Below are positions 5,429 to 46,814 of a DNA stretch of 64,000 bases, in pieces. The notes beneath the pieces were generated by a model, which had not been told where the DNA came from, ran no database searches, and worked only from the letters and a program-made list of their open reading frames with translations. Location of the stretch: IMG/VR virus record IMGVR_UViG_3300046559_001153, positions 124,001 to 188,000 of that record; one strand, 5' to 3'. Position 1 is the stretch's first letter. Each line of letters starts with the position of its first letter. The translations under genes were made by a program, and so were the position numbers.

Positions 5429-5442
5429 TTAGAGGAGTGAGG

Positions 5443-13380: not shown

Positions 13381-13805
13381 CCGGCACCTCAGCTTTAGAC
13401 GGATGGTTTGCCAGCTTCAACGGTGCAGAGATCATTCTTTTCACTCACGAGGGGGCGAAGAGGATGTTTTGCCTGGCAGCACTGCTGAAGGCCCTGTACG
13501 TCCCGGGCCGAACGCTTCAGGAGCACTACCAGAGGCCCGACGATATTGAGCTGATCGCCGGGCTATTCTTTGATGGTGAAGTGATCGGCGCGGGTGTGCT
13601 ATTGAAGGAGAAGTCGAAAACCAACTTGAGCGTTTACGTTACGCCCGAGCATCGACGGAAAGGCTACGGGACCAAGTTGGTGCAGATGATTCGAGGAGTA
13701 GCTGGCAGGCCCTTGTACGTTTCAATAATCGGTCTGACGGGCCAGGCTTTCTGGGACAACGCTAATTCTACGTTGGGAGGGGAACATGAATTCACAAGAG
13801 TTTGA
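13377..13805 (+). CDS. GNAT-family acetyltransferase
   Basis: Acetyl-CoA motif A: LSVYVTPEHRRKGYGTKLV. Confidence 0.8.
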   Translation: MTGTSALDGWFASFNGAEIILFTHEGAKRMFCLAALLKALYVPGRTLQEHYQRPDDIELIAGLFFDGEVIGAGVLLKEKSKTNLSVYVTPEHRRKGYGTKLVQMIRGVAGRPLYVSIIGLTGQAFWDNANSTLGGEHEFTRV

Positions 13806-24291: not shown

Positions 24292-24587
24292 TGAAACATG
24301 GGCGAGGGGCATCATCCACGAGGGTCTTAGCTGCTCATCGGGGCTAAACGCCGTGACGGAAGATGCTGAGATACGATTGTGAGCGTATCTGGACCAGCTG
24401 GAAAAACTCTCGATACTGGTCCCGAGCAGTTGTGGCAGGCTGACTGAGTAACGGGTTTCGATCCAGACCTTTCGCCCGTGGTCAGTTTTGTGTAACGATC
24501 CGCTATCGTGCAACTGCTCTGCCCGCTGTATACTTCGATGAAATGATCCATTGGCATGGATGCCAGGTTCTTTTGAAAGGCCGATCC

Positions 24588-25022
24588 ATGTTCGACGACA
24601 CTGACGAGGTTCTTGGTGCTGGAGCCCGGGAAGGCGAACAACCGCCCCCGTGGCTGTTGTCGTTGGTCGGGGCTGTTCGTGAACGATTAACCCGATCAAT
24701 CTGCGAGTATTCCCCAGTAGAGCAAATCCGTTACTACTGGTGTGATGCCCCGGAAGTTGCCGGTCAGGACGACGGCACGCAGATCAATTTTTATCCAGCT
24801 ATTCACCCTGACTCGCTACAAGACGAGCAGGGTTTTTTGATTGATGTGGTTGGCTTGCTCACGACGTTAGACAAGACGCACGCTGTTGATTGGGTGCACC
24901 GGTACTGCCCAGTTCATGCAGCGAGTTCTTGTTTTTTGCGGATCGCCGGCGTCTACAATTCAAATCGAGTCGAATTGTGCCTGGCTGGTTTGGCCACAAC
25001 TCTCATCGAGGGTAATCTGTGA
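24588..25022 (+). CDS. Hypothetical protein
   Basis: GAAAGG RBS before ATG 24588; GTGA-coupled to the downstream GT. Confidence 0.6.
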   Translation: MFDDTDEVLGAGAREGEQPPPWLLSLVGAVRERLTRSICEYSPVEQIRYYWCDAPEVAGQDDGTQINFYPAIHPDSLQDEQGFLIDVVGLLTTLDKTHAVDWVHRYCPVHAASSCFLRIAGVYNSNRVELCLAGLATTLIEGNL

Positions 25023-25708
25023 AAGCAAAACCTCTCGTAACGGCTGTGATGATCACCGGTAAAGACCCGGCTCGCCAGCGGCTGGCTGAGATCGCCGTCG
25101 ATTCGGTGCTCCAACAGACTTACACCAATCTCGAATTGATCGTCATCAACGACGGCGATTATACGATAACCAGGCCAGCCGACCACCGATTGAGAGAGGT
25201 CCGCGTCCCCAAAGGGAAGGTGCTGGGTGAGCTCAGAAACATCGGATTGGACGTGGCCAAGGGCCAGTTCATTACGCAGACCGATGACGATGACTGGTAC
25301 CACCCGGAGCGGATCGAGCGGCAGATGGCATTCGCCGTGAAAGACGCCTGCGTGTTGCTCGAGTATCAGATCCGTTACTCGTTTGTGTCCAATTGCTCTT
25401 TTCGATACGGCTGTAAAGAGGGCATTGCTGGATCTATTCTTCATCCGCGGGGCGCCGGCCGATACCCGCCCAAGGCCAAAGCTGAGGATTCAGATTTTTG
25501 GCTACGCAACTGGGGCCCGAAACGCATCCTAATTCGAAACAAGACTGAAGCTGGTCTTTACGTGCGGATGTGCCACGGTTTTAATACCTGGAACGCCCGG
25601 CACATTATGAAACACCTTGATGGGAAGCAGGGTGTCTGGGAATTGGACCCGGCGGAGCAAGGATTGCTGCTCGGTGTTCTGGAAAAGTACAAAGTGAAAA
25701 ATGACTGA
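25019..25708 (+). CDS. Glycosyltransferase family 2
   Basis: SVLQQTYTNLELIVINDG, LGELRNIGLDVAKGQFITQTDDDDWYHPERIERQ. Confidence 0.9.
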   Translation: MKAKPLVTAVMITGKDPARQRLAEIAVDSVLQQTYTNLELIVINDGDYTITRPADHRLREVRVPKGKVLGELRNIGLDVAKGQFITQTDDDDWYHPERIERQMAFAVKDACVLLEYQIRYSFVSNCSFRYGCKEGIAGSILHPRGAGRYPPKAKAEDSDFWLRNWGPKRILIRNKTEAGLYVRMCHGFNTWNARHIMKHLDGKQGVWELDPAEQGLLLGVLEKYKVKND

Positions 25709-26018
25709 TGTCGATCGCAGAGAGTTTGTTCAGAAGGCTGTTGATTGTCTGAACACAGCGTTTCATTCGGATCCGGCAGCCATGCATGCGTTAATCGCTA
25801 ATCGAGTGCCGTGCAACGACAAGATGACCAATCATCCGCATATAATTTGCGATCCGATTCGCGTATTGCAGGATGAACGGAGTATGGTTGGCACGTTAGG
25901 CCTGTTGAACGGTGTCTTAGCTGCCATGGGCTTGCCTGCGGTTTGTTCTATCGTTCGTGACGATCCGCGTCAGACTTTGCAAGGATTTGATCTATACCGA
26001 CCGAAAGGTGCAGAATGA
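25701..26018 (+). CDS. Hypothetical phage protein
   Basis: 105 aa; RVPCN motif. Confidence 0.65.
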   Translation: MTDVDRREFVQKAVDCLNTAFHSDPAAMHALIANRVPCNDKMTNHPHIICDPIRVLQDERSMVGTLGLLNGVLAAMGLPAVCSIVRDDPRQTLQGFDLYRPKGAE

Positions 26019-27016
26019 AGAAGATCATTGTCACGGGGGCCGGTGGTTTCATCGGTCATCATCTTGTCAATGCCCTGGTAGCCCAGGGGCATGTTGTACT
26101 GGGCGTCGATATTAAGACGCCCGAGTTTTCGCCGTCTCAGGCCAGCCGATTCTACAAGCGAGACCTGCGTTCAGGCGTTGGTCTGGATGACTTGCTTGAT
26201 GAGTACGCGATCAACGAGGTTTACCACTTGGCTGCCGACATGGGCGGTATTGGCTTCATTACCGCGTCACTGGCGGATGTTGCCCGTAACAACACGCAAA
26301 TTCATTTGAAGGTTCTGGAGAGCGTTCGCCGATTTGGCGGATCCGACATTAAACTGTGCTTCTCCAGCACGGCGTGCGTTCTGGCACGATACAAGCAGAA
26401 CTTCACCGATTCCGTTCCGCTCACTGAAGATGATGACTTCCCGTACGACCCCGAGCCGGGCTACGGATTCGAGAAGCTCTACATGGAGCAGCTTCTTAAG
26501 TACTACCGAAAGGACTACGGGCTGGACTCGAGGATTGTCCGTTTTCATAACTGCTACGGGGCCGATGGTACCTGGCGTGGCGGTCGCGAGAAGGCGCCGG
26601 CCGCCGTCTGCCGCAAGATCGCCGAATTGCCGCCAGAGGGCGGTGAGGTGCAGGTTTGGGGCGACGGGTTATGTACCCGATCGTTTATGCACGTCGATGA
26701 CTGTGTCGAGGGCCTGATACGGATCATGGCGTCAGACTACGGAGACCCGCTCAATCTGGGGCGAGACGAGCTGATTAGCGTCGATGGCCTGTACGATCTG
26801 GTAGCTAGCATCGCCGGTAAGAAGATCACCAAATTTCACGATACCAGTAAGCCGGAAGGAGTTCGTGGGCGAAACGCCGATTGTACACGGCTCCAACAGA
26901 CGGTTGGCTGGGTGCCTGGGATCGATCTGCGTTCGGGGCTGGAACGGACGTACCCGTGGATTGCCGAGCAGGTAAAGAAGGCCAAGGTAGTCGAGGAGAT
27001 TGACCAGCATGGATGA
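26015..27016 (+). CDS. NAD-dependent epimerase, GDP-mannose 3,5-epimerase (GME)-like
   Basis: TGAGGFIGHH, HLAADMGGIGFI, YGFEK, GGREKAPAAVCRK, VWGDG..TRSF. Confidence 0.88.
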   Translation: MKKIIVTGAGGFIGHHLVNALVAQGHVVLGVDIKTPEFSPSQASRFYKRDLRSGVGLDDLLDEYAINEVYHLAADMGGIGFITASLADVARNNTQIHLKVLESVRRFGGSDIKLCFSSTACVLARYKQNFTDSVPLTEDDDFPYDPEPGYGFEKLYMEQLLKYYRKDYGLDSRIVRFHNCYGADGTWRGGREKAPAAVCRKIAELPPEGGEVQVWGDGLCTRSFMHVDDCVEGLIRIMASDYGDPLNLGRDELISVDGLYDLVASIAGKKITKFHDTSKPEGVRGRNADCTRLQQTVGWVPGIDLRSGLERTYPWIAEQVKKAKVVEEIDQHG

Positions 27017-27206
27017 CCTCTGGCGTTCTCGGGATTTTTGGTGTGAATTGAAAAAATTCGTTAAAGAGCAGGGGCTGTTTTCCATCAGACTAACTGAAAA
27101 ACAGGTAGATGGCATGCGTTACTGTTGCTATAACCCGGGCGACGGACCGGCCCCAGGTCTGAAGGCGTTTAACGCCCTCGGGTTGAACATCTTAGTTATC
27201 GATTGA
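27009..27206 (+). CDS. Small hypothetical protein
   Basis: GAGGAG RBS; coupled to its neighbours. Confidence 0.45.
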   Translation: MDDLWRSRDFWCELKKFVKEQGLFSIRLTEKQVDGMRYCCYNPGDGPAPGLKAFNALGLNILVID

Positions 27207-28015
27207 AAGACGACATGCTTCAACTTGATGAACCACATTTGACCATGGCCAAAAGTGCCTGCAACTTCGTTTACGAAGAAATCTTCCTGAACGACGTATA
27301 CGGTTTCCAGCTCTTGCAGAGACCAGTCGGACGTGTCTTGGATATCGGCGCCCACGTTGGCATGGCTTCGACCGCGTGCCGTCTGCTGTGGCCTGAGGCG
27401 GAGATCATCTGCGTTGAACCGCCAACTGGCAACCAGCCCGCATTGTGCCGAATGATTTCCGGGCAGCGTATCCGACTGATAGTCGCCGCTTTGGGTGACG
27501 ACGGGATCGAGATGCTTCATTGTGGAAGCAAAGATCCAAACTTGATTACCGGTGCTCACGGCTATTTCAAGAGCGACGTCTGGACTGACCCAGTTGACCG
27601 CGACAAGACTACGCATAACGTCGGATGTATCGGCCGGTCGCTGCACACGCTGGTCGCAAAATTCAAAACCAAAACTGATGGTCTGGTAGTCAAAATCGAT
27701 TGCGAGGGCGGCGAGTGGTCCATGATGCGAAATAGACAGAGCGATGAAGCTGTTCGATCGGCAGACTACTTGACTATGGAGGCGCACACGTTTGGCGGCT
27801 CACTCAACGGGGCCACCTACGAGGAGATCGCCAATTGGACAAACCGGTTTGCTGAGACACACGATGCGTTGATACCGGAAATCGAACAGTGCTGCCAGGG
27901 CGGGTTTATGCTCGGGCTCCTGAAGAAGGGTTTCGTATCTGAAGAACGAACTGACCGACTGAAACGGCATTTCTTACAACAGGTTGCCGGCCGAGCAACC
28001 ATCCTGACAGACTGA
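27203..28015 (+). CDS. FkbM-family SAM methyltransferase 1
   Basis: VLDIGAHVG, ICVEP, VVKIDCEGGE. Confidence 0.85.
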   Translation: MKDDMLQLDEPHLTMAKSACNFVYEEIFLNDVYGFQLLQRPVGRVLDIGAHVGMASTACRLLWPEAEIICVEPPTGNQPALCRMISGQRIRLIVAALGDDGIEMLHCGSKDPNLITGAHGYFKSDVWTDPVDRDKTTHNVGCIGRSLHTLVAKFKTKTDGLVVKIDCEGGEWSMMRNRQSDEAVRSADYLTMEAHTFGGSLNGATYEEIANWTNRFAETHDALIPEIEQCCQGGFMLGLLKKGFVSEERTDRLKRHFLQQVAGRATILTD

Positions 28016-28024
28016 AAGTGAAGC

Positions 28025-28714
28025 ATGGCCAAGCTCGATCCGTCTGTCCTACCAGAGGTGACTCGATTCCCCAAGAAGCTGTCCAAACGGGACATCTTCA
28101 TGCTGGTCCGCACGCATGCCCCCCTCATCCTGGAGATCGGCTGCAACGACGGGCAAGACACGCAGGAATTCATGACGCAGTTTGCCAAGGGTGAACTACA
28201 TGCGTTTGAGTGCGATCCACGTCCAATCGCCAAATTCAAAGCCAGGATTCAAGACCCGCGGATTCACCTGCACGAGATGGCTCTGGCCGACAAAAATAGC
28301 GTCATGACGTTGCATATGAGCGGTGGAACCACTGCTGGAGCTGACCGTGAAGACTGGGACATGTCGTCCAGTCTGTTGCCCCCGAATGCCCATCTATGGC
28401 AGCATCCGTGGTGCACATTCGATCGTAAGTGCGAAGTGCCCACGATGCGTTTAGACGACTGGGCCACCCGAGTGATTCCTGGCCGCACGGTCGATTTTGT
28501 GTGGATGGACGTACAGGGAGCCGAGCGGCTGGTGTTCGCCGGCGGACAGGATACATTTTTGAATCGTACACGTTTTGTGTATGCCGAGTTTTCTGTGATT
28601 GAGGAGTACACAGGTTGCTGGCTGGTTAATGATCTGGTGGCTGCGTTTCAAGGGTTCAAACCGATCGGCATTTACGAGAATTACAACGTTTTACTGGCAC
28701 GACAGGGATTGTGA
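28025..28714 (+). CDS. FkbM-family SAM methyltransferase 2
   Basis: LEIGCNDG, HAFECDP, MSSSLL, VDFVWMDVQGAE. Confidence 0.9.
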   Translation: MAKLDPSVLPEVTRFPKKLSKRDIFMLVRTHAPLILEIGCNDGQDTQEFMTQFAKGELHAFECDPRPIAKFKARIQDPRIHLHEMALADKNSVMTLHMSGGTTAGADREDWDMSSSLLPPNAHLWQHPWCTFDRKCEVPTMRLDDWATRVIPGRTVDFVWMDVQGAERLVFAGGQDTFLNRTRFVYAEFSVIEEYTGCWLVNDLVAAFQGFKPIGIYENYNVLLARQGL

Positions 28715-29421
28715 TGTCAAACCATCCGACCAGCTACGAATACTTGCGAGAGTACCAACAGATCAGCGAGGGGCTGCACACCTATCTTGATCTGCATCCA
28801 ATTGTCAAAGACCACGGCAGTCAGGCTGAAGAGGACGAGATCCTGGCCGAGCTGTTGCCCAATCCGTACGGACTCTATGTTGACGTCGGGTCGTACCACC
28901 AGTCTGAGTGCAGCAACACCTGGAAATTCTACAAACGAGGCTGGCGTGGTCTGCTCGTGGAGCCTGTGCCCATGTTCCAGCCACGGTTATTGCGTCACCG
29001 TCCTGGGGATGCCATCTTCCCTGTTGCCGCGTCAAACAAGACCGGTTACGCCTTGCTTAGATACTGCGGGTCGGTGAGTTCTCTGCAGGCTGACTGGCCG
29101 ATAGACGTCAGAACACACATTGTCGTCGAGACGATGACGCTGACTGAGATCTTGCGACAGTTCCCCGGGTTTATGCGTTCGGCAATTGAACGCGGCGCGT
29201 GGGACTTGTGTTCAATTGATGTCGAAGGTCACGAGCGAGAGGTGATCGAGGGGATTGATTTTAGCGTCTTCAGACCGAAGGTGATGTGCGTCGAGTACAT
29301 CTCTTACACGGACAACAACACGGGTGTCGACTTGTCGGGCGACTGGGACCAGCTACTGTTTGCTCAGGGATATGAGTTTTACAAACAGACCAAGTTCAAC
29401 AAAATTTACCGCGTGGTATAA
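28711..29421 (+). CDS. FkbM-family SAM methyltransferase 3
   Basis: YVDVGSYH...SNTW.FY..GWRGLLVEP, CSIDVEGHE. Confidence 0.9.
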   Translation: MMSNHPTSYEYLREYQQISEGLHTYLDLHPIVKDHGSQAEEDEILAELLPNPYGLYVDVGSYHQSECSNTWKFYKRGWRGLLVEPVPMFQPRLLRHRPGDAIFPVAASNKTGYALLRYCGSVSSLQADWPIDVRTHIVVETMTLTEILRQFPGFMRSAIERGAWDLCSIDVEGHEREVIEGIDFSVFRPKVMCVEYISYTDNNTGVDLSGDWDQLLFAQGYEFYKQTKFNKIYRVV

Positions 29422-29423
29422 CA

Positions 29424-30338
29424 ATGCAAATCGTTGACGTGCCAGCACGTTTCCAAAGCCCGTTTCACGCGTACCCGCCGCATACGCGAACGAACATCGA
29501 GAGCTTTTTCCTCGATTTTGCCAAAAGAAACATCGGCATCATCAAGACACATTTGAACTACCTGCCCATTCTGTGGACCAACAATTACGTCAGCTACCGC
29601 AACCGCGAGAAACGGGCTGATTTTCGAGCTGACCCGGAGATTCAACAGTGGCTCGATCAGCATGGTCCCGCATTAGGCCCTTGCTTCACTGTCGTTCAGA
29701 ATGATGACGGGCCTTACGAGACGCTGCCGCCCAACATCAAAGTGTTCGGCGCCGGCGGTACAGGCCATGTGGCCATTCCCCTGTTGTGCGACGCTCATCC
29801 TCGCCGAGGGATACCCAGGCAGAACAGGGCTTTCTTCACTGGTCAGATGAACTGCGGCGGTCCCGAGGCCGGTGTACACGGCCGGTCGTCCTGGAACCCG
29901 AATGGAGCTGGTGCACGAATCAGGCGGTCTATGTTTAAGGCTTTTGCCGACGCGCATGATCCGGAGTTTGTTGTCTCCGGCAAGCCTGGGCCGAACCCCC
30001 AGGCTGAATTTGAGATCGGCTTGTCAGCGTCAATCTTCGGGTTGGCACCGCGTGGGTACGGCAAAACGTCATTTCGTCTTTACGAAGCCATGCAGCTCGG
30101 AGCGATCCCCGTTTACATCTATGACGAACCGTGGCTTCCGTTCGCCAAAGAGATTCACTGGCCAGCTTTCTGTGTATTGTGTCCTGAGAGCGAGATTGCC
30201 GCTTTGCCTCAAAAACTCAAAAGCATGACTCAGGACGAGATTTCGAGATTGCAAGATAACCTCGATCGCATCTATCCTCTGTACTTTACGCTAGAGGCTG
30301 CGAGCTGGCAGATCATCAAAATTCTCGAAAGTCAGTAA
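29424..30338 (+). CDS. Exostosin-family (GT47) glycosyltransferase
   Basis: SIFGLAPRGYGKTSFRLYEAMQLGAIPVYI..EPWLPF. Confidence 0.85.
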   Translation: MQIVDVPARFQSPFHAYPPHTRTNIESFFLDFAKRNIGIIKTHLNYLPILWTNNYVSYRNREKRADFRADPEIQQWLDQHGPALGPCFTVVQNDDGPYETLPPNIKVFGAGGTGHVAIPLLCDAHPRRGIPRQNRAFFTGQMNCGGPEAGVHGRSSWNPNGAGARIRRSMFKAFADAHDPEFVVSGKPGPNPQAEFEIGLSASIFGLAPRGYGKTSFRLYEAMQLGAIPVYIYDEPWLPFAKEIHWPAFCVLCPESEIAALPQKLKSMTQDEISRLQDNLDRIYPLYFTLEAASWQIIKILESQ

Positions 30339-31000
30339 TGGCACACGGCTATATCAACGGTAAAGCCCCCCGACGAATAGATGACATTCCAATTTCCTGG
30401 GTGTTTGTCGACCTTGAAGGTGTCCTGGCCAATTTGGCTACGGCCATATTCGAGCACCTGGATCGACCAAGTTTGATCGCTGAGCCCTGGCCGGCCGGCG
30501 CCACGATCGAGGATCGACTGGGTGTCACGAAGAAGTACATGTTCGATTTGCTTATTCGCGATTCGGCGTTGATCTGGAAAAAGGTCAAACCATATCCGTG
30601 GGCTCGCAACCTGCTGACCAACCTCCGGGCACCGCGGGTGATCGTGACTGGCGGTCGATGGGGGATAGGGGCTATCACAGATAAATGGAAATGGTGTGAA
30701 CGCCATGTGAACGGAAAGTTCTCCGATCTAGTAGTCATTCAGCACAGGCATCTTCTGGCCGGCAGAGAAGCTCTGTTAATTGACGATCACGCCGGCCACA
30801 CCGAGCGATTTAAGTCGTGCGGAGGGCATAGCTTGCTCTTTCCGCAGCCGTGGAATGCAGTCGACGACACGAGCTCTGAACCTGATACAGTGTTGGACGG
30901 GGTGATGGGCCAGATCAGGTGTCGATACCTGTGTGCGGCAGTTCCAGAAACTCAAGCCAGGGACACGCAGTATGGACAGTTCGCTAGCGAATTTACTTGA
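30338..31000 (+). CDS. HAD-like 5'(3')-deoxyribonucleotidase family protein
   Basis: FVDLEGVLAN (degenerate DxD), K..WCERH, LLIDD...F...GG..LLFPQPWN. Confidence 0.7.
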   Translation: MAHGYINGKAPRRIDDIPISWVFVDLEGVLANLATAIFEHLDRPSLIAEPWPAGATIEDRLGVTKKYMFDLLIRDSALIWKKVKPYPWARNLLTNLRAPRVIVTGGRWGIGAITDKWKWCERHVNGKFSDLVVIQHRHLLAGREALLIDDHAGHTERFKSCGGHSLLFPQPWNAVDDTSSEPDTVLDGVMGQIRCRYLCAAVPETQARDTQYGQFASEFT

Positions 31001-31556
31001 AACGTGCCGAGGACGAGAGCATTTACCAGCCGTATTGAATGCGGCGGGCTTGCTCGGGTTCGGCATTGAAATTGGTGCGGCCGAGGGCGGCCACGCTGAG
31101 TACCTGCGAAAGGAATGGAAAGGCAAGAAGTTGTGGATGGTCGATCCGTGGATTGAGCAGCCTGTCGCCGAGTACATCGACGGCTGCAACCAGCCGCAAG
31201 CTGGCCAGGACGCCAACATGGCAGATTGTTACGCCCGGATGACCAAATTCCCAGCCGAGTCGTACGAGATCATCCGTGGCATGTCGCTGGACGTCGTAAC
31301 CGACTTCCCGGATCACTATTTTGATTTTGTCTACCTCGACGGGAATCACAATCGCTGGGCGATCGAGGCTGACATCCTTGCCTGGCTGTTGAAGATGAAA
31401 ACCGGCGGCGTGTTTGCCGGTCATGACTACGTGCCTGACTGTGCGACATATGGTGTACAGGCCGCGGTTAATGCCTTCTGCCAGACGACCGGTCGTCAAT
31501 TGTTTGTTATCCCTGGTCATGAATTCTGCAACCCCTCGTGGGCTGTGATTGTTTGA
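30972..31556 (+). CDS. Class I SAM methyltransferase (Methyltransf_24-like)
   Basis: GIEIGAAEG, WMVDPW, FDFVYLDGNH, GGVFAGHDY. Confidence 0.85.
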   Translation: MDSSLANLLETCRGREHLPAVLNAAGLLGFGIEIGAAEGGHAEYLRKEWKGKKLWMVDPWIEQPVAEYIDGCNQPQAGQDANMADCYARMTKFPAESYEIIRGMSLDVVTDFPDHYFDFVYLDGNHNRWAIEADILAWLLKMKTGGVFAGHDYVPDCATYGVQAAVNAFCQTTGRQLFVIPGHEFCNPSWAVIV

Positions 31557-31567
31557 TTTGTGTTGCC

Positions 31568-31681
31568 GCTGCGGAGGCTTGGTGTGATCAAAGCACACGA
31601 TGGCGAAAGCATCCCGGGATCAGTGTTGCCCGGCAGCCATGATTGGTATAAGACCCGTGGGTTCGATCCCCACCCGCAGCG
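31568..31681 (+). ncRNA. tRNA-like RNA (acceptor, D and T arms) lacking a canonical anticodon arm
   Basis: GCTGCGG/CCGCAGC acceptor, GCTT/AAGC D stem, GTGGG-TTCGATC-CCCAC T arm, and a 61-nt insert between the D and T arms. Confidence 0.55.
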
Positions 31682-31682
31682 T

Positions 31683-31700
31683 TAACTTTTCGTAAAGTTA
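31683..31700. promoter_or_regulatory. Palindromic motif, copy 3
   Basis: TAACTTTTCGTAAAGTTA, 20 nt before ATG 31721. Confidence 0.8.
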
Positions 31701-31720
31701 CCTCTTACCGAAAGTTTATC

Positions 31721-33283
31721 ATGCCCGAATACACCTGGCTTCTGGCCGGAGGCGCCGCCCTTACCGGTGTGCTGACCACTTGCTGGCAGTACGTTCGAAT
31801 GATCTACCAGTGGATGTACAGCTGGCTGTTCGTGACGGCCGACATGCATCAGTGGCAGTCGGAAATCTTCATCCAGTATCTGACTGAGAATTTCACGTCG
31901 ACTCCTTACGGTCCACGCATGTTTTTGACGTGGTGGATGCCGCTTCCGCGTCGCCGTCGAACATTGCCTGTCCTCTTCTCCGTGCCGCCGGTTGCTGGCA
32001 CGATTTACTGGAAAGGTTGGAGACCTCTGTGGCTGAACAAGAAGACCACGCAAAGCGGCTCGGCGAACACAGCATCAGACCCTACTGATGACCGACGAAT
32101 TGGTGCCAGTCTAGCTTTTCTACGCGGTACATTCAATCTTCACCAGTTGATGATTGACTCGGTGGCCGCCCTACGAATTAACAACGCTGGCAAGAGCCGT
32201 TTTTACGTCAAGAGGCTGTTTGGCCAGCGTGGAATGTACGTCACAAAGGACGGCAATGAACCGAGAGCCAGTCGTGGGGGAACGATTCAGGGCATGGGAA
32301 GTGGTAACCTGGTAAGCATTCTTCCCGGATTACCGCTGAATTATTCTCTGGAAGATGTCCAGCCTGTCGCCATGTCCGACAGAGCAGGCTTCCGTGGTCT
32401 GGTATTCGATGAAAAGACAGAAGAGCTGGCCGATTTTGTTAAGGGGTGGCTGCATGAAGAATCGTGGTATCACGATCACATGATCGCCTGGAAAGTGGGG
32501 ATCGGCCTGTTTGGTCAACCTGGTTGCGGGAAGACCAGCTTTGCCCGAGCGTTGGGGGAGGAATTGGATATGCCAATTTTCGCAATTGCCTTGCCTACCT
32601 GTACTGACGAGGATTTCGAGGTGCACTGGGGTTATGCTTTGAGCAACGGGCCGTGTATTGTGTTGCTCGAGGATATCGACAATGCCTATGACGGACGCAC
32701 GCCACGTCATGAGGATCAGGTAGGATTCGACCTGCTTCTTAACTGCATCGACGGCGCGGCTACCAGTGACGGGCTTGTGGTGATCATCACAACCAATTGC
32801 GTCGAGAAGCTGGATCCGGCCCTCCGCCGTCCTGGACGAATTGACCGAATGATTGAGCTCAAGCCGCCTACGTCGGAAAACTGCCTGAAGTTGTGCGGCC
32901 GATTTTTTGATCCAGACGACGCCCTGCTCGCTCGTGTTCATGCCAAACTGGTCGGCCAGACCGGTGCAACTATCGTGCAGTACTGCTCACGGTTGTCTCT
33001 TCAATTGAAATGGGGACATCCGGTCGACGAGCTGCCTGACGTGACTGACTTTGTGACGACAGCTGAATCGAATGTCGCTGTACCTGAGCCGAAAAAGGAT
33101 GTGCAGACAGTTATCCGCGAGACTGGTGAGATTGCTAAACGTGATCTGGCTGCTATGGTCAGCCGCCTGTTGCCTAAGCCCGGGCGTGGGATGAACTACG
33201 CTGACGAAGTTGCAGCACTCAGCGACGAGGAGCCGTTACAGAGCCCGTTCCAAAGTGTCCACAGCACCGCTAACGAGGGTTAA
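31721..33283 (+). CDS. BCS1-like AAA+ ATPase with N-terminal membrane anchor
   Basis: Walker A GQPGCGKTS, Walker B VLLEDID, LLNCIDG, TTN...LDPALRRPGRID. Confidence 0.88.
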   Translation: MPEYTWLLAGGAALTGVLTTCWQYVRMIYQWMYSWLFVTADMHQWQSEIFIQYLTENFTSTPYGPRMFLTWWMPLPRRRRTLPVLFSVPPVAGTIYWKGWRPLWLNKKTTQSGSANTASDPTDDRRIGASLAFLRGTFNLHQLMIDSVAALRINNAGKSRFYVKRLFGQRGMYVTKDGNEPRASRGGTIQGMGSGNLVSILPGLPLNYSLEDVQPVAMSDRAGFRGLVFDEKTEELADFVKGWLHEESWYHDHMIAWKVGIGLFGQPGCGKTSFARALGEELDMPIFAIALPTCTDEDFEVHWGYALSNGPCIVLLEDIDNAYDGRTPRHEDQVGFDLLLNCIDGAATSDGLVVIITTNCVEKLDPALRRPGRIDRMIELKPPTSENCLKLCGRFFDPDDALLARVHAKLVGQTGATIVQYCSRLSLQLKWGHPVDELPDVTDFVTTAESNVAVPEPKKDVQTVIRETGEIAKRDLAAMVSRLLPKPGRGMNYADEVAALSDEEPLQSPFQSVHSTANEG

Positions 33284-33285
33284 CT

Positions 33286-34230
33286 ATGTTCAGTTTCGCG
33301 ACGACGACTTACAACGAGACGCTCAAGACAGGCAACGGTTCCTGGTTTCTAGAGTGTCTCAAGGTGCCAATTGAGGATGACCGAGTCACGGAGATCGTGG
33401 TCTCGGACGATTGTTCGTCCGACTACGACGCCTTGTGCAAACTGGTGGCCCATTTGCCAAAGGTGAAGATGTTTCGTCTACCGGAGAACCGCGGGCCTTT
33501 CGGTAACAAGATCGAATCGGTGCGACGATCAACGTGTGACTGGGTCATCATTGGTGATTCAGACAACACAATCACACCGGACTATCTCCGTGTTGCCAGT
33601 GAGAACCTGGGCGATCCGACTCGTCTGTTGTGCCCGACTTACGCGGCGCCCAACTTTGATTACCGCCACATGGGGGGCCAGATCATCGGTCCGGGTGATT
33701 TTGCTCGTATGACCACCGAGAAGCTCTTCTGGTGTTTCGTTAACACGGGCAACTGGGTATTGAACCGACAACGGTTCAACCAGGCTTTCGATCGATTCTT
33801 CGACAAGCCCCGTTTTGACCACGAGCAGCCAGACTACCTCGCGGCACCCTGGCGCAGCACGCTCAGGCACCGACAGGTTTACGACTCGGCCGACAGCTTC
33901 TATATCAACCGAACATGGCTCATGGCTGACCCGGCTAACCGAATGTTCGCCGTTCCCGATCTGATCTATGAGCACAGATGGAGACGAGACAGTACGTACG
34001 ACCGCGGTGGGCCCGAGAAAGAAATGCTCATCCCGGTCTACTACTACGAGTTGCTCGACTTCGCGAAGGGGGAGCGACATAACTGGCGCGTTCTCGGGCG
34101 AGGGCATGACGCAAACATCATTCTGCAGAAGACAGAGCTTGGCCAGGCAGTCGGTTCGCCGTGCGATGTGTTGCATTTGAACTGCCACGATTATCACATT
34201 GTCAAAACCGAGAGGAAGCCAAAACTATGA
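33286..34230 (+). CDS. Glycosyltransferase family 2-like
   Basis: TTTYNE, EIVVSDDCSSD, NRGPFGNK, WVIIGDSDN. Confidence 0.78.
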   Translation: MFSFATTTYNETLKTGNGSWFLECLKVPIEDDRVTEIVVSDDCSSDYDALCKLVAHLPKVKMFRLPENRGPFGNKIESVRRSTCDWVIIGDSDNTITPDYLRVASENLGDPTRLLCPTYAAPNFDYRHMGGQIIGPGDFARMTTEKLFWCFVNTGNWVLNRQRFNQAFDRFFDKPRFDHEQPDYLAAPWRSTLRHRQVYDSADSFYINRTWLMADPANRMFAVPDLIYEHRWRRDSTYDRGGPEKEMLIPVYYYELLDFAKGERHNWRVLGRGHDANIILQKTELGQAVGSPCDVLHLNCHDYHIVKTERKPKL

Positions 34231-35174
34231 GCGGCGTGATCACGATGACCAAGTTCGGCCGCATGGGCCGGTTCGGGAATCAGATCTTTCAACTGATGTT
34301 CCTGGCCGACTACGCCCGAGTACACAATCTCGAGTTGCAGCTACCCCCGTGGGTGGGCGATCAGCTGTTCAAACGGCACTTCAGCCCGATGACAGTCCGT
34401 GGTTTGCAGACAGCTGTCGAGCATGACGAGACGTTTGGACGGGGTGTGGGGATCTTTCCGACGGAGCGAGCCAAGGGAATCTCTCGCAGCAATTTCGATT
34501 ATCACGGGTATGGCCAATATCACACCAGCTACTACGCTCCGAACAGGGCATATTTGACCAGTCTGTTTGACTTGCAACCCGAAGTGACCGAGCGACTGTC
34601 TGAGCCTGTTACCAAACTTCGAAACATGGGCAAGACGATTGTGGGCGTTCATCTGCGTCGCGGTGATTACGGCCGAGGCATGTTCTACATCACACCTGTG
34701 GCCTGGTACTTGGATCTGTTGGAGACGTTGTGGCCAACGCTGGATGAACCAGTTCTGTTCATCTCGACCGAGACTCCGGCACTTGTCCCGGAGTTTGCCA
34801 AGTTCAATCCGCAGACGTCCGAATCGTTAGGCATCGACTTACGGGCCAAACCGCTGACCGGTTACAACTATCTGAGGCACGATTTGCGAAGTGCCGACCC
34901 GCGACAGCTGGATTGGGTTCCTGACTGGGTGCTATTACGCCACTGTAACATGCTGCTCATTCCGAACAGCACATTCTCATTTAGTGCGGCCTTGTTCCCG
35001 CTGTGTGAGAAGCGACGCCAGTGTTTCAAATCCTGCCTGGTTCGCTGTGGCAGCTTCATGTTCGAACCGTTCTCGGCCTGGAACGCCCAGCCGATGACTT
35101 ACGCGAAAGCAGAAGCCTACCCAGATCTGGTCGACCAGATCACTGTGAAGTCGAACCCGTACTGGAAAGACTGA
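34227..35174 (+). CDS. Alpha-1,2-fucosyltransferase-like (GT11)
   Basis: GRFGNQIFQ, VGVHLRRGDY, D..LL..C..L.I.NSTFSF.AA. Confidence 0.88.
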   Translation: MSGVITMTKFGRMGRFGNQIFQLMFLADYARVHNLELQLPPWVGDQLFKRHFSPMTVRGLQTAVEHDETFGRGVGIFPTERAKGISRSNFDYHGYGQYHTSYYAPNRAYLTSLFDLQPEVTERLSEPVTKLRNMGKTIVGVHLRRGDYGRGMFYITPVAWYLDLLETLWPTLDEPVLFISTETPALVPEFAKFNPQTSESLGIDLRAKPLTGYNYLRHDLRSADPRQLDWVPDWVLLRHCNMLLIPNSTFSFSAALFPLCEKRRQCFKSCLVRCGSFMFEPFSAWNAQPMTYAKAEAYPDLVDQITVKSNPYWKD

Positions 35175-35175
35175 G

Positions 35176-35997
35176 ATGCTCCCGCTCGCGGTGGTTATTC
35201 CGACGTGTAACGACCCGCATCGCCTGCGACTGGTCTTGGAAGGATTTAATCGTCAAACCGACAAAGATTTCAATCTGACGATCGTTTCAGACGACGGCGA
35301 CATCAATCAGGAAATGGCCGTTGTGAATGAATATGGGACAATGCCGGGTTGGCGATATGTGCATTTACCAGGCAAGACAGTTCCTTTCAGGGCGGCCGCT
35401 GCCCGTAATCGGGGTCTACAGTTTGCCGTTGGTTCCCGCGTTCTGTTTATGGACGGCGATACTGTCCCGAGCCCGGGCGTCGTAGCTCAGCACAAAACCT
35501 ACGGTGACCGCCTCAGCGTGGTGCTGGGCCGCGTGAGACGCGTGGCTGAAGACAAGGTCATGAATACGGGGATCCCTGACGTCCAGAGGCAATTCGCCGG
35601 CTTCGACCTCAAGGATGACAAGCGACTGGAACTGGGTGGCGTCTATCGCAACCTGCAACAGCAAGTCAACGGCGACAGGCAGCGGTACATGGCCACGCCG
35701 CCATCAAGCTACCGATTCTGCTGGTCGTGTCACATGAGCGTGCCGCTGGACTTGACCAGAACCTTGGGCGGTTTCTGGGAGAAGTTTACGACATTCGGCG
35801 GTGAAGACCAGGAGCTGGGGCTGCGTCTGTTCAAGGCTGGCTGTAACATCGTAGTTGATTTCCACATTGAATCCTGGCATCTTGATCATCCACTACGCGG
35901 CGACCCCAACAGCAACCAACACCATCAGACGATCGCCGAATCATCCAGACAACCGACGCTGGTGCGTAACGGTGGTCCAATTCGTCCTCTCAATTGA
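35176..35997 (+). CDS. Glycosyltransferase family 2 (GT7C-like C-terminus)
   Basis: VVIPT, IVSDDG, AAARNRG, LFMDGD, GGFWEKF..FGGEDQELGLRL. Confidence 0.88.
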   Translation: MLPLAVVIPTCNDPHRLRLVLEGFNRQTDKDFNLTIVSDDGDINQEMAVVNEYGTMPGWRYVHLPGKTVPFRAAAARNRGLQFAVGSRVLFMDGDTVPSPGVVAQHKTYGDRLSVVLGRVRRVAEDKVMNTGIPDVQRQFAGFDLKDDKRLELGGVYRNLQQQVNGDRQRYMATPPSSYRFCWSCHMSVPLDLTRTLGGFWEKFTTFGGEDQELGLRLFKAGCNIVVDFHIESWHLDHPLRGDPNSNQHHQTIAESSRQPTLVRNGGPIRPLN

Positions 35998-36007: not shown

Positions 36008-36565
36008 ATGTTCGCCTTATTGCAGGGCCCGGACGACTGGCAAACATTTCAGGGGCAGTTTCTCGCGCAGATGGCCACTTCGAAGATCGAAGTCGGGGCC
36101 GGGTTCTCCGCTGAACCAGTTAACTACCCGTGTCTGGCCGACGTGTTTGCCGTGCCTGGATCAATCCAATGCTGTTTCGTTTACAGACCGGACGCCGCCC
36201 GATTGTTGCTGGCGGCAGAAATGATTTCAGCACCGCCGCCGTCACAACCAGCTGGGATACCGCAAGTGGCGTCAGCTCCCCAGGCTAACCCATCGGACGA
36301 GGATGTGGCTGAGACCTTAGCGTGGACAGATCAGCAAGAGGCTATGAACCGCCACGTTTCGGCCATGTTATTGGCAATCGTGGAGCTCCTGGTCGACACG
36401 TCCATTATCAAACCACCGGCCTTCGAACAGAGGCTGATTGCTGCCCAGCGTACGGTGGACGAGCTGTTAACCGAGAAAAAAGATCGAGCCGGAATCGACC
36501 AGCCACTGAACGAATCTGTCAATTTGGTTCTCAAACGGCTGGGATACAGGGTGGAAGACCGTTGA
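36008..36565 (+). CDS. Hypothetical protein
   Basis: 185-aa ORF. Confidence 0.65.
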   Translation: MFALLQGPDDWQTFQGQFLAQMATSKIEVGAGFSAEPVNYPCLADVFAVPGSIQCCFVYRPDAARLLLAAEMISAPPPSQPAGIPQVASAPQANPSDEDVAETLAWTDQQEAMNRHVSAMLLAIVELLVDTSIIKPPAFEQRLIAAQRTVDELLTEKKDRAGIDQPLNESVNLVLKRLGYRVEDR

Positions 36566-46093: not shown

Positions 46094-46105
46094 GGGGGGA
46101 GTTGT

Positions 46106-46678: not shown

Positions 46679-46814
46679 CGTAAGTCCGAAGCCTGCCGTG
46701 AATTACAGCCAGCCCCGAAAATTCCTCCCGATTATTTGGAATTTCGTCTATGGGATCAGCCCTTGATATGGTCTATTTGCTGGGTGGCTGACAACCTAGA
46801 AGGGCTGGTATGCG

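What the first reader, a model, noticed from the sequence alone, without database searches (positions are those of the whole stretch)
25019..35997. 11-kb phage glycosylation and O-methylation island embedded among virion genes
Seen: GT2 x3, GT47, GT11, a GME-like epimerase, three tandem FkbM methyltransferases and one Methyltransf_24, flanked on both sides by putative virion genes. The GTs show no obvious TM segments, and no Wzx/Wzy/ABC exporter is present in the window. Established: some phages glycosylate virions or DNA with GT plus methyltransferase sets. Inference: a complex methylated glycan is built in the cytoplasm on virion proteins or on DNA, unusually elaborate for a phage.
Basis: partly seen in the sequence, partly recalled or inferred. 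Interest (0 to 1): 0.7.

Follow-up and report, generated by a model that had tools for sequence, protein, structure and literature searches.

The report
Phage methylated L-galactose glycan gene island
A 224-kb soil phage carries a real 11-kb block of sugar-building and sugar-methylating genes, of a kind also seen in cyanophages. It most likely coats the phage particle, or else remodels the host surface, but probably does not modify DNA, and its target is still untested.

Summary
The enzyme calls are real. Window 25019-35997 encodes three GT2s, a GT47-like and a GT11-like transferase, a GDP-mannose 3,5-epimerase with all four catalytic residues, three divergent FkbM methyltransferases and a TylF/Methyltransf_24 methyltransferase.

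The claim that virion genes flank the island is not supported. The neighbours are two Gly/Ala/Pro-rich unknowns, a Dam methylase, a 2H phosphoesterase and phage RNA polymerase. The capsid, portal, sheath and fibre genes lie 27 kb or more away.

The complete genome has no lipid-carrier initiating transferase, flippase, polymerase or exporter. It also has no hydroxymethyl-pyrimidine pathway, so DNA glycosylation is unlikely.

Homologous GT47+FkbM modules recur in unrelated phages. Four sit inside structural gene blocks, and one is fused into a single protein. This genome also has extra GT2 genes beside the portal, capsid and collagen-like fibre genes. A cellular GT11-like homologue, however, sits in a Wzy-type polysaccharide cluster, and cyanophages such as S-SCSM1 carry very similar islands.

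Best guess (about 0.4): an O-methylated, L-galactose-containing glycan on virion proteins. Main rival (about 0.33): remodelling of host envelope glycans. This is a new member of a known but functionally untested kind.

The parts
20800..22620 (+). 606-aa Gly/Ala/Pro-rich protein of unknown function. It is a conserved upstream neighbour of the island, not shown to be a virion protein.
   Evidence: No Pfam hit; only a weak phrog_16160 hit. The Atlas gives only DUF3008, DUF6582 and Gly-zipper leads at low score. About 64% identical in the structured parts to the syntenic gene of relative contig L034. Among the most G/A/P-rich proteins in the genome, with S/T content below the mean.
22651..24291 (+). 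546-aa Gly/Ala/Pro-rich protein of unknown function, the second conserved upstream neighbour.
   Evidence: No family hit. The most G/A/P-rich ORF in the genome (0.44), with S/T 0.10. Conserved in synteny in L034.
24588..25022 (+). 144-aa ORF of unknown function (159 aa from 24543). First gene of the tightly packed block, preceded by a 251-nt gap.
   Evidence: JGI gene call. No Pfam or NCBIfam hit. Intergenic gap.
25019..25708 (+). GT2a: a small soluble GT-A glycosyltransferase with a DDDD motif at residues 89-92.
   Evidence: Pfam Glycos_transf_2 1.8e-15. Weak NCBIfam likeness to TuaG, WcaA and EpsE. 82% identical in L034 over 227 of 229 aa, which supports the long start. Motif. No TM segment.
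25701..26018 (+). 105-aa protein of phage family phrog_21281, function unknown, with one hydrophobic stretch.
   Evidence: PHROG 2.1e-10. 37% identical in L034. Hydrophobic stretch at residues 63-81.
26015..27016 (+). GDP-mannose 3,5-epimerase (GME). [quoted passage not shown]
   Evidence: PDB 2c59 E=7e-83, with Cys145, Tyr174, Lys178 and Lys217 conserved. Pfam Epimerase 2e-44. 40-43% identical to cyanophage epimerases, including the one annotated GME in S-SCSM1.
27009..27206 (+). 65-aa ORF, function unknown.
   Evidence: JGI gene call. No hit.
27203..28015 (+). FkbM1: SAM-dependent FkbM-family methyltransferase, predicted sugar O-methyltransferase.
   Evidence: Pfam Methyltransf_21 1.7e-7. 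TIGR01444 2.9e-13. 52% identical in L034. No BLASTP similarity to FkbM2 or FkbM3.
28025..28714 (+). FkbM2: FkbM-family methyltransferase. This is the type most often found next to, or fused with, GT47-like genes elsewhere.
   Evidence: Pfam 1.6e-14. TIGR01444 3.1e-19. Its homologues lie adjacent to GT47-like genes in phage loci and MAG contigs and form a fused FkbM-GT47 protein in L060.
28711..29421 (+). FkbM3: FkbM-family methyltransferase.
   Evidence: Pfam 8.1e-16. 49% identical to the gene next to the GT47-like gene in the 192-kb phage contig L001.
29424..30338 (+). GT47-like (exostosin-fold, GT-B) glycosyltransferase. It is the hallmark gene of the module.
   Evidence: Pfam Exostosin_GT47 5.9e-14. 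AF2 model pLDDT 95.4; best PDB matches are EXT1, EXT2 and EXTL3, E about 1e-10, TM 0.6. 194 homologues at E<=1e-10; none of the 120 listed is on a contig longer than 235 kb.
30338..31000 (+). NT5C-like HAD-superfamily protein, a possible phosphatase. Motif I reads D-x-E instead of D-x-D, so its role is unclear.
   Evidence: Pfam NT5C 3.1e-6. HAD-IA below cut-off. Same position and the same VDLE motif in relative L034, 63% identical. No PDB sequence match.
30933..31556 (+). Methyltransf_24 methyltransferase (TylF-like class); predicted fourth sugar O-methyltransferase. JGI places the start at 31035.
   Evidence: Pfam 4.5e-11. A protein at the corresponding place in the L035 cluster carries TylF + Methyltransf_24. 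58% identical in L034.
31721..33283 (+). BCS1-like AAA ATPase (520 aa), preceded by a 164-nt gap. Its membership of the pathway is unproven.
   Evidence: Pfam AAA 3.5e-21. phrog_7485 2.2e-33. Atlas neighbours are viral AAA/BCS1-like clusters. No close relative found in IMG/VR.
33286..34230 (+). GT2b: a GT-A glycosyltransferase with a DSD motif at residues 91-93.
   Evidence: Pfam 1.7e-13. Homologues sit beside GT47-like genes in L001, L004, L047 and L057. Motif.
34227..35174 (+). GT11-like transferase of the fucosyltransferase superfamily, which uses GDP-beta-L-sugars. Predicted L-galactosyl or L-fucosyl transferase.
   Evidence: Pfam Glyco_transf_11, 28.2 bits against a cut-off of 23.9. HLRRGDY motif and N-terminal GRFGNQ motif. 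Model pLDDT 93.9 matches FUT8, NodZ, AtFUT1 and POFUT1 only. One homologue is named alpha-1,2-fucosyltransferase by its source.
35176..35997 (+). GT2c: a GT-A glycosyltransferase with a galactosyltransferase-like C-terminal region and a DGD motif.
   Evidence: Pfam Glycos_transf_2 8.1e-12 and Glyco_transf_7C 9.2e-7. NCBIfam EpsD-like 1.3e-20, below cut-off. Motif.
36008..36565 (+). 185-aa ORF of unknown function, tightly linked downstream. Membership uncertain.
   Evidence: No Pfam, PHROG or NCBIfam hit. The Atlas gives nothing reliable.

Best explanation
The island is a phage-borne, self-contained set of cytoplasmic enzymes that builds a short, heavily O-methylated heteroglycan. The proposed acceptors are the phage's own virion proteins (capsid, fibre or tail proteins) during particle assembly. 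[quoted passage not shown] Inferred steps: the methyltransferases O-methylate the sugars, with the FkbM working together with the GT47-like enzyme; the acceptor is a virion protein; and the glycan masks or stabilises the particle surface, for example against adsorption to debris, proteases, lectin-like or antibody-like binders, or desiccation in soil. The AAA ATPase and the HAD-like protein may be accessory or unrelated.
For: The genome is complete (direct terminal repeats, CheckV 100%). It encodes no lipid-carrier initiating transferase, no polytopic membrane protein that could be Wzx, Wzy or an ABC permease, no real ABC ATPase and no sugar nucleotidyltransferase. The pathway must therefore end on something already present in the cytoplasm. 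Homologous GT47+FkbM (with or without GT11 and GT2) modules occur in phages that share no other genes with this one. Four of about nine contexts examined are inside structural gene blocks: directly upstream of a Phage_cap_E capsid gene (L030); directly after an SU10-type adaptor, among large structural-size ORFs (L032); after the tape-measure and tail genes; and between the head protease and the tail or fibre genes of a cyanobacterial prophage, where FkbM and GT47 are one fused 491-aa protein (L060). In this genome three more GT2-domain genes lie beside virion genes: one directly after the portal gene; a weak GT2+methyltransferase protein 2.3 kb after the capsid gene and just upstream of a collagen-like tail-fibre gene; and a 644-aa protein with an N-terminal GT2 domain just after the fibre genes. 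The GT47-like subfamily looks mainly viral. None of the 120 listed homologues is on a contig longer than 235 kb. A single-pattern scan of 185,579 species genomes returned only 19 loci, of which at least one is a phage-like contig (L042) and one a prophage (L057). Precedent: cluster O mycobacteriophages carry an O-methyltransferase plus three tandem glycosyltransferases that modify capsid and tail-tube proteins (Freeman et al. 2023, as summarised in PMC11600133).
Against: At this locus the island is not next to any recognised virion gene. The neighbours are unknowns and nucleic-acid enzymes. No enzyme here can be identified as a protein glycosyltransferase. The best structural matches of the GT11-like and GT47-like models act on glycans, and POFUT1 and other protein O-glycosyltransferases rank lower. 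A cellular GT11-like homologue sits with an FkbM methyltransferase in a classical Bac_transf/Wzy envelope polysaccharide cluster. In T4-like marine phages, similar modules sit among auxiliary genes rather than structural ones, and they are conventionally read as host cell-wall modifiers. No homology to actinophage glycosylation genes was seen for the two proteins tested. No expression or proteomic data exist, and no RNA run was listed.
Confidence: 0.4

Rival explanations
1. Host envelope remodelling. The soluble phage transferases and methyltransferases act at the inner face of the membrane on the host's own undecaprenyl-linked O-antigen, capsule or EPS intermediates. The host's initiating enzyme, flippase or ABC exporter, and ligase do the rest. 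The changed, methyl-capped surface glycan blocks superinfection or keeps progeny from sticking to infected cells and debris.
For: A cellular homologue (41% identity) of the GT11-like enzyme lies in a Bac_transf + Wzy_C + GT1/GT4 + WecG cluster next to an FkbM methyltransferase that also has a weak V. cholerae RfbT hit. GT2a and GT2c resemble TuaG, WcaA, EpsE and EpsD type enzymes, below the family cut-offs. TM-less transferases are normal for such pathways (established knowledge). Cyanophage islands with the same families (GME, GT11, GT2, methyltransferases) are interpreted this way in the literature. The island's neighbours here are not structural genes.
Against: The phage supplies none of the membrane steps, so five transferases would have to fit a foreign host pathway and its exporter specificity. 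Homologous modules repeatedly sit inside head and tail gene blocks, which is unexpected for surface-conversion genes. The GT47-like family looks predominantly viral. A new surface glycan has to replace existing LPS or EPS within one lytic cycle (inference).
Confidence: 0.33
2. Another cytoplasmic acceptor. The glycan is built on a non-virion phage protein (for example the two conserved Gly/Ala/Pro-rich proteins encoded just upstream), or as a free or small-molecule-linked methylated oligosaccharide, comparable to the cytoplasmic polymethylated polysaccharides of mycobacteria.
For: The two G/A/P-rich genes keep their position directly upstream of the island in the only related phage contig found. 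No export or lipid-carrier genes are present. A mycobacterial methylmannose-polysaccharide mannosyltransferase appears among weak GT-B structural matches (rank 21, TM 0.42, so only a generic resemblance).
Against: The flanking proteins are poorer than average in Ser/Thr and have no detectable family. Nothing ties them functionally to the island beyond adjacency. No primer-forming enzyme for a free polysaccharide is recognisable.
Confidence: 0.15
3. DNA sugar hypermodification. The transferases attach a methylated glycan to bases of the phage genome to evade restriction.
For: Phage GT-A and GT-B enzymes, sometimes paired with epimerases, do glycosylate 5-hydroxymethylcytosine in DNA (Pyle et al., bioRxiv 10.1101/2023.12.21.572611). 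The island lies among nucleic-acid metabolism genes (Dam methylase, adenylosuccinate-synthetase-like gene, RNA polymerase). An NT5C-like protein is present in the island.
Against: The complete genome has no thymidylate-synthase-like hydroxymethylase, no TET/JBP dioxygenase and no C5 cytosine methyltransferase. The only DNA methylase found is a D12-class N6-adenine enzyme. Known DNA glycans are mono- to trisaccharides. Five transferases, four O-methyltransferases and GDP-L-galactose supply would be far beyond any described case. Ordinary shotgun sequencing assembled the region identically in several soil and rhizosphere samples, which is only weak evidence.
Confidence: 0.04

Closest known systems
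Cyanophage 'cell-wall synthesis and modification' glycan islands (Synechococcus phages S-SCSM1, S-SCSM2R, S-SKS1, P-SSM2 type)
   Same: Contiguous phage-encoded sets of GDP-sugar enzymes, fucosyltransferase-family enzymes, GT2s and methyltransferases, with no export genes. S-SCSM1 has GMD, GFS and an annotated GDP-mannose 3,5-epimerase, followed by an alpha-1,2-fucosyltransferase, several glycosyltransferases, two methyltransferases and a NodZ-like enzyme. The epimerases are 40-43% identical. S-SKS1 has a GT47-like homologue (32%) next to GMD, GFS and a fucosyltransferase.
   Different: This phage is an unrelated 224-kb soil or rhizosphere myovirus with its own Arash-like RNA polymerase. It has GME but no GMD or GFS, so it points to L-galactose rather than L-fucose. 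It carries four methyltransferases in 11 kb, plus a BCS1-like AAA ATPase and a HAD-like gene. The function of the cyanophage islands is itself untested.
Mycobacteriophage virion glycosylation (cluster O and F phages; Freeman et al. 2023)
   Same: Phage-encoded tandem glycosyltransferases plus an O-methyltransferase, with no exporter, acting in the cytoplasm. This is what the best explanation proposes the island works like.
   Different: No sequence homology was detected for the two proteins tested. The mycobacteriophage genes modify capsid and tail-tube subunits. Here the island is remote from the capsid gene, and the glycan, acceptor and host (a Gram-negative host is only an assumption from the phage's relatives) are unknown. 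This set is much larger: five transferases, four methyltransferases and a sugar-nucleotide epimerase.
Chlorovirus PBCV-1 capsid glycosylation machinery (A064R, A075L and related)
   Same: A virus-encoded, cytoplasmic, host-independent set of glycosyltransferases and sugar methyltransferases that builds a methylated glycan on the major capsid protein (own knowledge). A075L appears as a weak structural match of the GT47-like model (E about 1e-4, TM 0.31).
   Different: It is a eukaryotic-algal virus with different enzyme families. The structural match is at generic GT-B level only. No evidence here of attachment to the capsid protein.
Phage DNA sugar hypermodification clusters (Pyle et al. 2023/2024)
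   Same: Phage GT-A and GT-B enzymes, sometimes with an epimerase, related to LPS or teichoic-acid enzymes.
   Different: The defining neighbours (5mYOX or ThyS-like hydroxymethylase, C5 methyltransferase) are absent from the whole genome.
Bacterial Wzy- or ABC-dependent O-antigen/EPS clusters with FkbM/RfbT-type methyl capping
   Same: The same enzyme families. A 41%-identical GT11-like homologue sits beside an FkbM/RfbT-like methyltransferase in such a cluster.
   Different: The phage lacks the initiating phosphoglycosyltransferase, flippase, polymerase, ligase and exporter.

Membership tests
Cyanophage-type phage glycan island (S-SCSM1 / S-SKS1 kind) | Contiguous phage-encoded GDP-sugar-modifying enzyme + fucosyltransferase-family GT + GT2s + methyltransferases | tested here: met
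   Pfam calls on all genes. The S-SCSM1 and S-SKS1 islands were read for comparison.
Cyanophage-type phage glycan island (S-SCSM1 / S-SKS1 kind) | Detectable homology of component proteins | tested here: met
   GME is 40-43% identical to cyanomyovirus proteins, with 247 phage records matched. GT47-like is 32% identical to S-SKS1. The GT11-like protein found no match among isolated phages.
Cyanophage-type phage glycan island (S-SCSM1 / S-SKS1 kind) | No export or lipid-carrier genes in the phage | tested here: met
Phage virion protein glycosylation system (mycobacteriophage type) | Tandem glycosyltransferases with an O-methyltransferase encoded by the phage | tested here: met
Phage virion protein glycosylation system (mycobacteriophage type) | Genes placed with the capsid or tail structural genes | tested here: not met
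   The island's neighbours are not structural. The capsid gene is at genome 192566-193504 and the portal gene at 85850-88735. This feature is met by the extra GT2 genes of this genome and by homologous modules in other phages.
Phage virion protein glycosylation system (mycobacteriophage type) | Glycan demonstrated on capsid or tail subunits | not testable with these tools
   Needs virions or co-expressed proteins and mass spectrometry.
Phage virion protein glycosylation system (mycobacteriophage type) | Sequence homology to the characterised actinophage enzymes | tested here: not met
   tblastn of the GT47-like and GT11-like proteins against 50,697 phage records gave no actinophage hit. The GT2s were not tested this way.
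Phage DNA sugar hypermodification cluster | A 5-hydroxymethyl-pyrimidine-forming enzyme (ThyS-like hydroxymethylase, or C5 methyltransferase + 5mYOX/TET) in the genome | tested here: not met
   PF00303, PF12851 and PF00145 are all absent from the complete genome, and the positive controls worked.
Phage DNA sugar hypermodification cluster | Sugar-modified nucleoside in phage DNA | not testable with these tools
   Needs nucleoside LC-MS.
Envelope polysaccharide (O-antigen/EPS/CPS) gene cluster | Initiating polyprenyl-phosphate glycosyl- or phosphoglycosyl-transferase | tested here: not met
   PF02397 and PF00953 are absent.
Envelope polysaccharide (O-antigen/EPS/CPS) gene cluster | Flippase and polymerase, or ABC exporter | tested here: not met
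   No ORF has more than two hydrophobic segments. The only ABC_tran hits are sub-threshold, with the two motifs about 600 residues apart in one 719-aa ORF. Reading this as an SMC/Rad50-type ATPase is an inference.
GDP-mannose 3,5-epimerase (enzyme family) | Full-length similarity to characterised GME, with catalytic Cys145, Tyr174, Lys178 and Lys217 | tested here: met
   E=7e-83 to PDB 2c59 over residues 3-325, with all four residues aligned and conserved. Activity was not assayed.
GT11 / fucosyltransferase superfamily | HxRRGD(Y) GDP-sugar motif, N-terminal G-x-G-N-Q motif, and the fucosyltransferase fold | tested here: met
   HLRRGDY at residues 164-170 and GRFGNQ near the N-terminus, numbered from the 34161 start. 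Pfam hit above cut-off. The model matches FUT8, NodZ, AtFUT1 and POFUT1 only.
GT47 (exostosin) family | GT47 domain signature and exostosin-like GT-B fold | tested here: met
   Pfam 52.5 bits against a cut-off of 33.4. Foldseek top 16 hits are all EXT1, EXT2 or EXTL3, with TM up to 0.64. Only the C-terminal half of the Pfam profile is matched, so 'GT47-like' is the safer name.

The most novel reading that the evidence does not exclude
The GT47-like + FkbM pair, often accompanied by GT11-like and GT2 enzymes, is the core of a mobile, largely phage-specific 'virion glycan cloak' module. It is shared by unrelated tailed phages of soil, freshwater and marine bacteria. In this jumbo phage it would decorate capsid or collagen-like fibre proteins with a heavily O-methylated L-galactose-containing glycan. 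That would extend virion glycosylation from actinophages to large phages of other hosts, and would reinterpret the cyanophage 'LPS genes'.
Probability: 0.3. Interest if true: 0.75.

Novelty: new member of a known kind. Interest (0 to 1): 0.5.

Why it matters
Large glycosyltransferase and methyltransferase islands are common in big phages, yet none from a phage other than an actinophage has an experimentally known target. This island is compact and has well-resolved enzymes: a GME with intact catalytic residues, a fucosyltransferase-fold enzyme with its GDP-sugar motif, and four methyltransferases. It sits in a complete genome that demonstrably lacks both export machinery and DNA hydroxymethylation. 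That narrows the possible acceptors and makes it a good candidate for heterologous reconstitution. If the target is the virion, it would show that phage particles in soil carry methylated glycan coats. That bears on adsorption, persistence, immune recognition in phage therapy, and on how the 'LPS genes' of cyanophages are read. If the target is the host envelope, it is an example of a lytic phage rewriting surface glycans with borrowed host export steps. L-galactose is a rare sugar in bacteria, so its use here is of glycobiological interest in either case.

Tried and rejected
- Megablast of the island against 50,697 phage records: no match.
- Looking for close relatives through the AAA ATPase in IMG/VR: none found.
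- PHROG and Pfam scans of about 60 flanking and distal ORFs: most returned nothing, so the virion genes had to be located by tblastn against the annotated Salmonella phage Arash.
- Atlas look-alike searches of the 606-aa flank protein and the 185-aa downstream ORF: only low-score leads, no virion evidence.
- Sigma-70 promoter and terminator scan, and 8-mer enrichment in intergenic regions, to assign a temporal class: no usable motif. The phage has its own RNA polymerase.
- RNA-seq runs holding the island: none was listed.
- Laying DNA contigs of four soil or rhizosphere runs on 24000-29900: the same sequence with no indels or island variants. The extra pile-ups are conserved SDR motifs of other organisms.
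- Predicted complex of the GT47-like protein with FkbM2, prompted by the natural fusion in L060: the tool gave 'no answer'. This is not evidence either way.
- The idea that the Gly/Ala/Pro-rich flank proteins are mucin-like acceptors: not supported, because their Ser/Thr content is below the genome mean.
- A complete ADP-heptose pathway around the RfaE-like kinase: no GmhA/SIS gene, and the only cytidylyltransferase-like gene is about 86 kb away on the genome.
- PurZ versus PurA identity of the adenylosuccinate-synthetase-like gene: unresolved. PDB hits are ordinary PurA, while the PHROG family carries the PurZ label.

Full report
**What the window is.** The window is bases 124001-188000 of a single 224,270-bp contig. 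The contig has direct terminal repeats, a CheckV completeness of 100% and a GC content of 55.5%. Almost all genes are on one strand, and there is one tRNA-His. The contig is a JGI metagenome assembly. Identical sequence is present in many soil and rhizosphere metagenomes. The genome is a myovirus-type jumbo phage:
- A baseplate wedge gene lies at genome 5218-6873.
- A tail sheath gene lies at 212469-215270, and a tail-fibre-like gene at 197156-198766.
- tblastn against the annotated Salmonella phage Arash places the terminase at 45427-47280, the portal at 85850-88735, the major capsid protein at 192566-193504, and two giant RNA-polymerase subunits at window 41675-46093 and 52573-56883.

**Checking the observation.**
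These are three GT2s, a GT47/exostosin-like protein, a GT11-like protein, an SDR epimerase, three tandem FkbM methyltransferases and a Methyltransf_24 protein.
- The JGI gene calls agree with these genes, apart from some start codons.
It is BCS1-like, and its nearest clusters are viral.
The 105-aa ORF belongs to phage family phrog_21281.
- Genes from 24588 to 31556 overlap or abut. A 164-nt gap precedes the AAA gene, and a second tight run extends to 36565.

**Enzymology.**
- *Epimerase.* It is not a generic epimerase. It matches plant GDP-mannose 3,5-epimerase structures at E=7e-83 over its full length. The next-best PDB hits are at about 1e-27. The catalytic Cys145, Tyr174, Lys178 and Lys217 are conserved in the alignment. 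The predicted product is GDP-L-galactose, with some GDP-L-gulose.
- *Supply of GDP-mannose.* The genome has no sugar nucleotidyltransferase. No GMD- or GFS-type hit was seen in the ORFs that were scanned, though no genome-wide search for them was run. GDP-mannose must therefore come from the host.
- *GT11-like protein.* It carries the HLRRGDY GDP-sugar motif and an N-terminal GRFGNQ motif. Its AlphaFold model (pLDDT 93.9) matches only GDP-fucose-dependent transferases: FUT8, NodZ, AtFUT1 and POFUT1. L-galactose is 6-hydroxy-L-fucose, so the pairing of GME with a fucosyltransferase-fold enzyme is chemically coherent. That pairing is an inference.
- *GT47-like protein.* Its model (pLDDT 95.4) matches EXT1, EXT2 and EXTL3.
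- *GT2 proteins.* All three have DxD motifs.
- *Methyltransferases and paralogues.* The three FkbM proteins show no BLASTP similarity to one another, and neither do the GT2s. They are old, distinct enzymes rather than recent duplicates, which suggests different positions or substrates. With the TylF-like enzyme, four O-methyltransferases serve five transferases. A heavily O-methylated oligosaccharide is therefore the expected product. This is also an inference.

**Context and the virion-flank claim.**
- The two upstream ORFs (606 and 546 aa) are among the most Gly/Ala/Pro-rich proteins in the genome. Their Ser/Thr content is below average, and no family links them to virions.
- Further upstream lie a D12-class Dam methylase, an RfaE-domain-I-like sugar kinase and an adenylosuccinate-synthetase-like gene.
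- Downstream lie unknown small ORFs, a 2H phosphoesterase and the RNA polymerase.
- The first ORF with homology to a protein annotated 'structural' in Arash is at window 57151-59652. The match is weak, and the gene is about 21 kb downstream.
- 'Embedded among virion genes' is therefore not supported for this locus.

**Whole-genome tests of the possible targets.**
- *Envelope route.* The genome has no Bac_transf or WecA/MraY-type initiating transferase. No ORF has more than two hydrophobic segments, which excludes Wzx, Wzy and ABC permeases. The only ABC_tran signals are sub-threshold Walker and signature motifs about 600 residues apart in one 719-aa ORF. That looks like an SMC/Rad50-type ATPase, which is an inference.
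- *DNA route.* Described DNA sugar hypermodification clusters are defined by a neighbouring ThyS-like hydroxymethylase or a C5-methyltransferase plus 5mYOX/TET pair. PF00303, PF12851 and PF00145 are all absent, and the positive controls worked.
- *Conclusion.* The DNA option is unlikely. If the envelope is the target, the phage must borrow every membrane step from the host.

**Comparative evidence.**
- Relatives of the GT47-like protein in IMG/VR (31-42% identity) nearly always bring along FkbM, and often GT11-like, GT2b-like and epimerase genes. These phages share no other gene with ours.
- The GT47-FkbM adjacency holds in phage and MAG loci alike. In a Vulcanococcus prophage the two are fused into one 491-aa protein. 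This is strong evidence that they act together.
- About nine contexts were examined for the position of the module:
  - Directly upstream of a Phage_cap_E capsid gene in a 192-kb phage.
  - Directly after an SU10-type adaptor gene, among large structural-size ORFs.
  - After tape-measure and tail genes.
  - Between the head protease and tail or fibre genes in the prophage.
  - Among auxiliary genes (PhoH, NUDIX) in T4-like marine phages.
  - Inside a pure glycan cluster of more than 20 kb.
  - Among unknown ORFs in one further contig.
- One closer relative of our phage was found, an 18.9-kb contig whose GT47-like protein is 72% identical. It keeps the same order: the two G/A/P-rich genes, then GT2a, the FkbMs, GME, GT47, HAD and MT24. 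It has an extra GNAT acetyltransferase and two extra unknown ORFs. The island is therefore a conserved but plastic unit.
- A 41%-identical cellular homologue of the GT11-like enzyme lies in a textbook Bac_transf/Wzy polysaccharide cluster, next to an FkbM/RfbT-like methyltransferase. This shows where the enzymes came from and keeps the envelope hypothesis alive.

**Other glycosyltransferases in this genome.** Beyond the island, GT2 domains occur in three further ORFs:
- Directly after the portal gene (88732-89487).
- In a 404-aa ORF with weak GT2 and methyltransferase hits (195771-196985). It lies 2.3 kb after the capsid gene and just upstream of a tail-fibre gene with a collagen-like Gly-X-Y tract.
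- At the N-terminus of a 644-aa protein just after the fibre genes (199392-201326).

This placement is the best within-genome hint that virion proteins are glycosylated.

**Comparison with what is known.**
- The nearest described things are the glycan islands of cyanophages. S-SCSM1 has GMD, GFS and an annotated GME, followed by an alpha-1,2-fucosyltransferase, several GTs, two methyltransferases and a NodZ-like enzyme. S-SKS1 has GMD, GFS, a GT47-like gene and a fucosyltransferase. S-SCSM2R is reported with 13 GTs.
- These islands are interpreted, without experiments, as host cell-wall modifiers.
- The only phage system with a proven protein target is the mycobacteriophage O-methyltransferase plus three GTs, which acts on capsid and tail-tube proteins. 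No homology to actinophage genes was seen for the two proteins tested.
- The island is best filed as a new member of the known, functionally open class of phage glycan islands. Its distinguishing features are an unrelated soil jumbo phage, GME without the fucose branch, four methyltransferases, and associated AAA and HAD genes.

**Verdict.**
- The estimated probabilities are:
  - Virion-protein glycosylation: about 0.4.
  - Host envelope glycan remodelling using host membrane steps: about 0.33.
  - Another cytoplasmic acceptor: about 0.15.
  - DNA: about 0.04.
- The target cannot be settled with sequence tools. The reconstitution and mass-spectrometry experiments listed under next steps would settle it.

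Noticed in passing
genome 88732-89487, 195771-196985 and 199392-201326 (outside the window; loci L019:12732-13487, L022:9771-10985, L022:13392-15326): Three further GT2-domain genes lie beside virion genes. One is directly after the intein-containing portal gene. One is a weak GT2+methyltransferase protein 2.3 kb after the capsid gene, just upstream of a collagen-like tail-fibre gene. One is a 644-aa protein with an N-terminal GT2 domain and a Cys-rich DUF6171-like tail.
   Followed up: partly
L060:10001-11476 (Vulcanococcus limneticus MAG contig, prophage region): A natural fusion of an FkbM methyltransferase and a GT47-like transferase in one 491-aa protein. It sits with GT2, GT11 and GT25 genes between the head protease and the tail or fibre genes of a prophage.
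   Followed up: partly
window 6136-7356: An adenylosuccinate-synthetase-like gene falls in the PHROG family labelled as the PurZ-type enzyme of 2-aminoadenine (Z) genomes. Pfam and PDB see only generic PurA, and no DatZ- or MazZ-like neighbour was recognised. Whether the phage DNA contains aminoadenine is open.
   Followed up: partly
window 13786-14772: A PfkB-family kinase whose best match is RfaE domain I, D-glycero-beta-D-manno-heptose-7-phosphate kinase (E 3.5e-41, below the equivalog cut-off). No GmhA/SIS gene is present, and the only cytidylyltransferase-like gene is at genome 51670-51939. It may feed a second nucleotide-sugar route.
   Followed up: partly
window 52573-56883: A 1436-aa protein combines an RNA-polymerase-subunit-like N-terminal part (phrog_25354; homologous to Arash gp216) with a C-terminal region that matches ATP-dependent DNA ligase.
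   Followed up: no
genome 85850-88735 and 187518-190133 (the latter starts at window 63518): Probable inteins in the portal protein (a weak, below-cut-off Intein_splicing hit) and in a structural protein homologous to Arash gp222 (Hint + LAGLIDADG).
   Followed up: no
window 31721-33283: A BCS1-like AAA ATPase sits in the middle of the glycan island. Its look-alikes are mostly from tailed phages and giant viruses. No close homologue was found in IMG/VR, and its link to glycosylation is unknown.
   Followed up: partly
window 30338-31000 and L034:10915-11577: The NT5C-like HAD protein has Glu in place of the second Asp of HAD motif I (VDLEG/VDLED). This is conserved in the relative phage, so it may not be a conventional phosphatase.
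   Followed up: partly
window 5248-5826 and 9082-9534: Two paralogous DUF6197 proteins lie on either side of the adenylosuccinate-synthetase-like gene.
   Followed up: no
L034:11549-12037: The related phage contig has an extra GNAT acetyltransferase between the HAD and Methyltransf_24 genes, plus two extra unknown ORFs. Island content therefore varies between close relatives.
   Followed up: partly
L030:11595-16114: In the 192-kb phage whose glycan module abuts the capsid gene, the module also encodes a TPP-dependent enzyme, an acetaldehyde-dehydrogenase-like enzyme, an HMGL-like aldolase, a nucleotidyltransferase, a 4,6-dehydratase-like SDR enzyme and a DegT aminotransferase. This looks like a branched-chain or amino-sugar pathway.
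   Followed up: no
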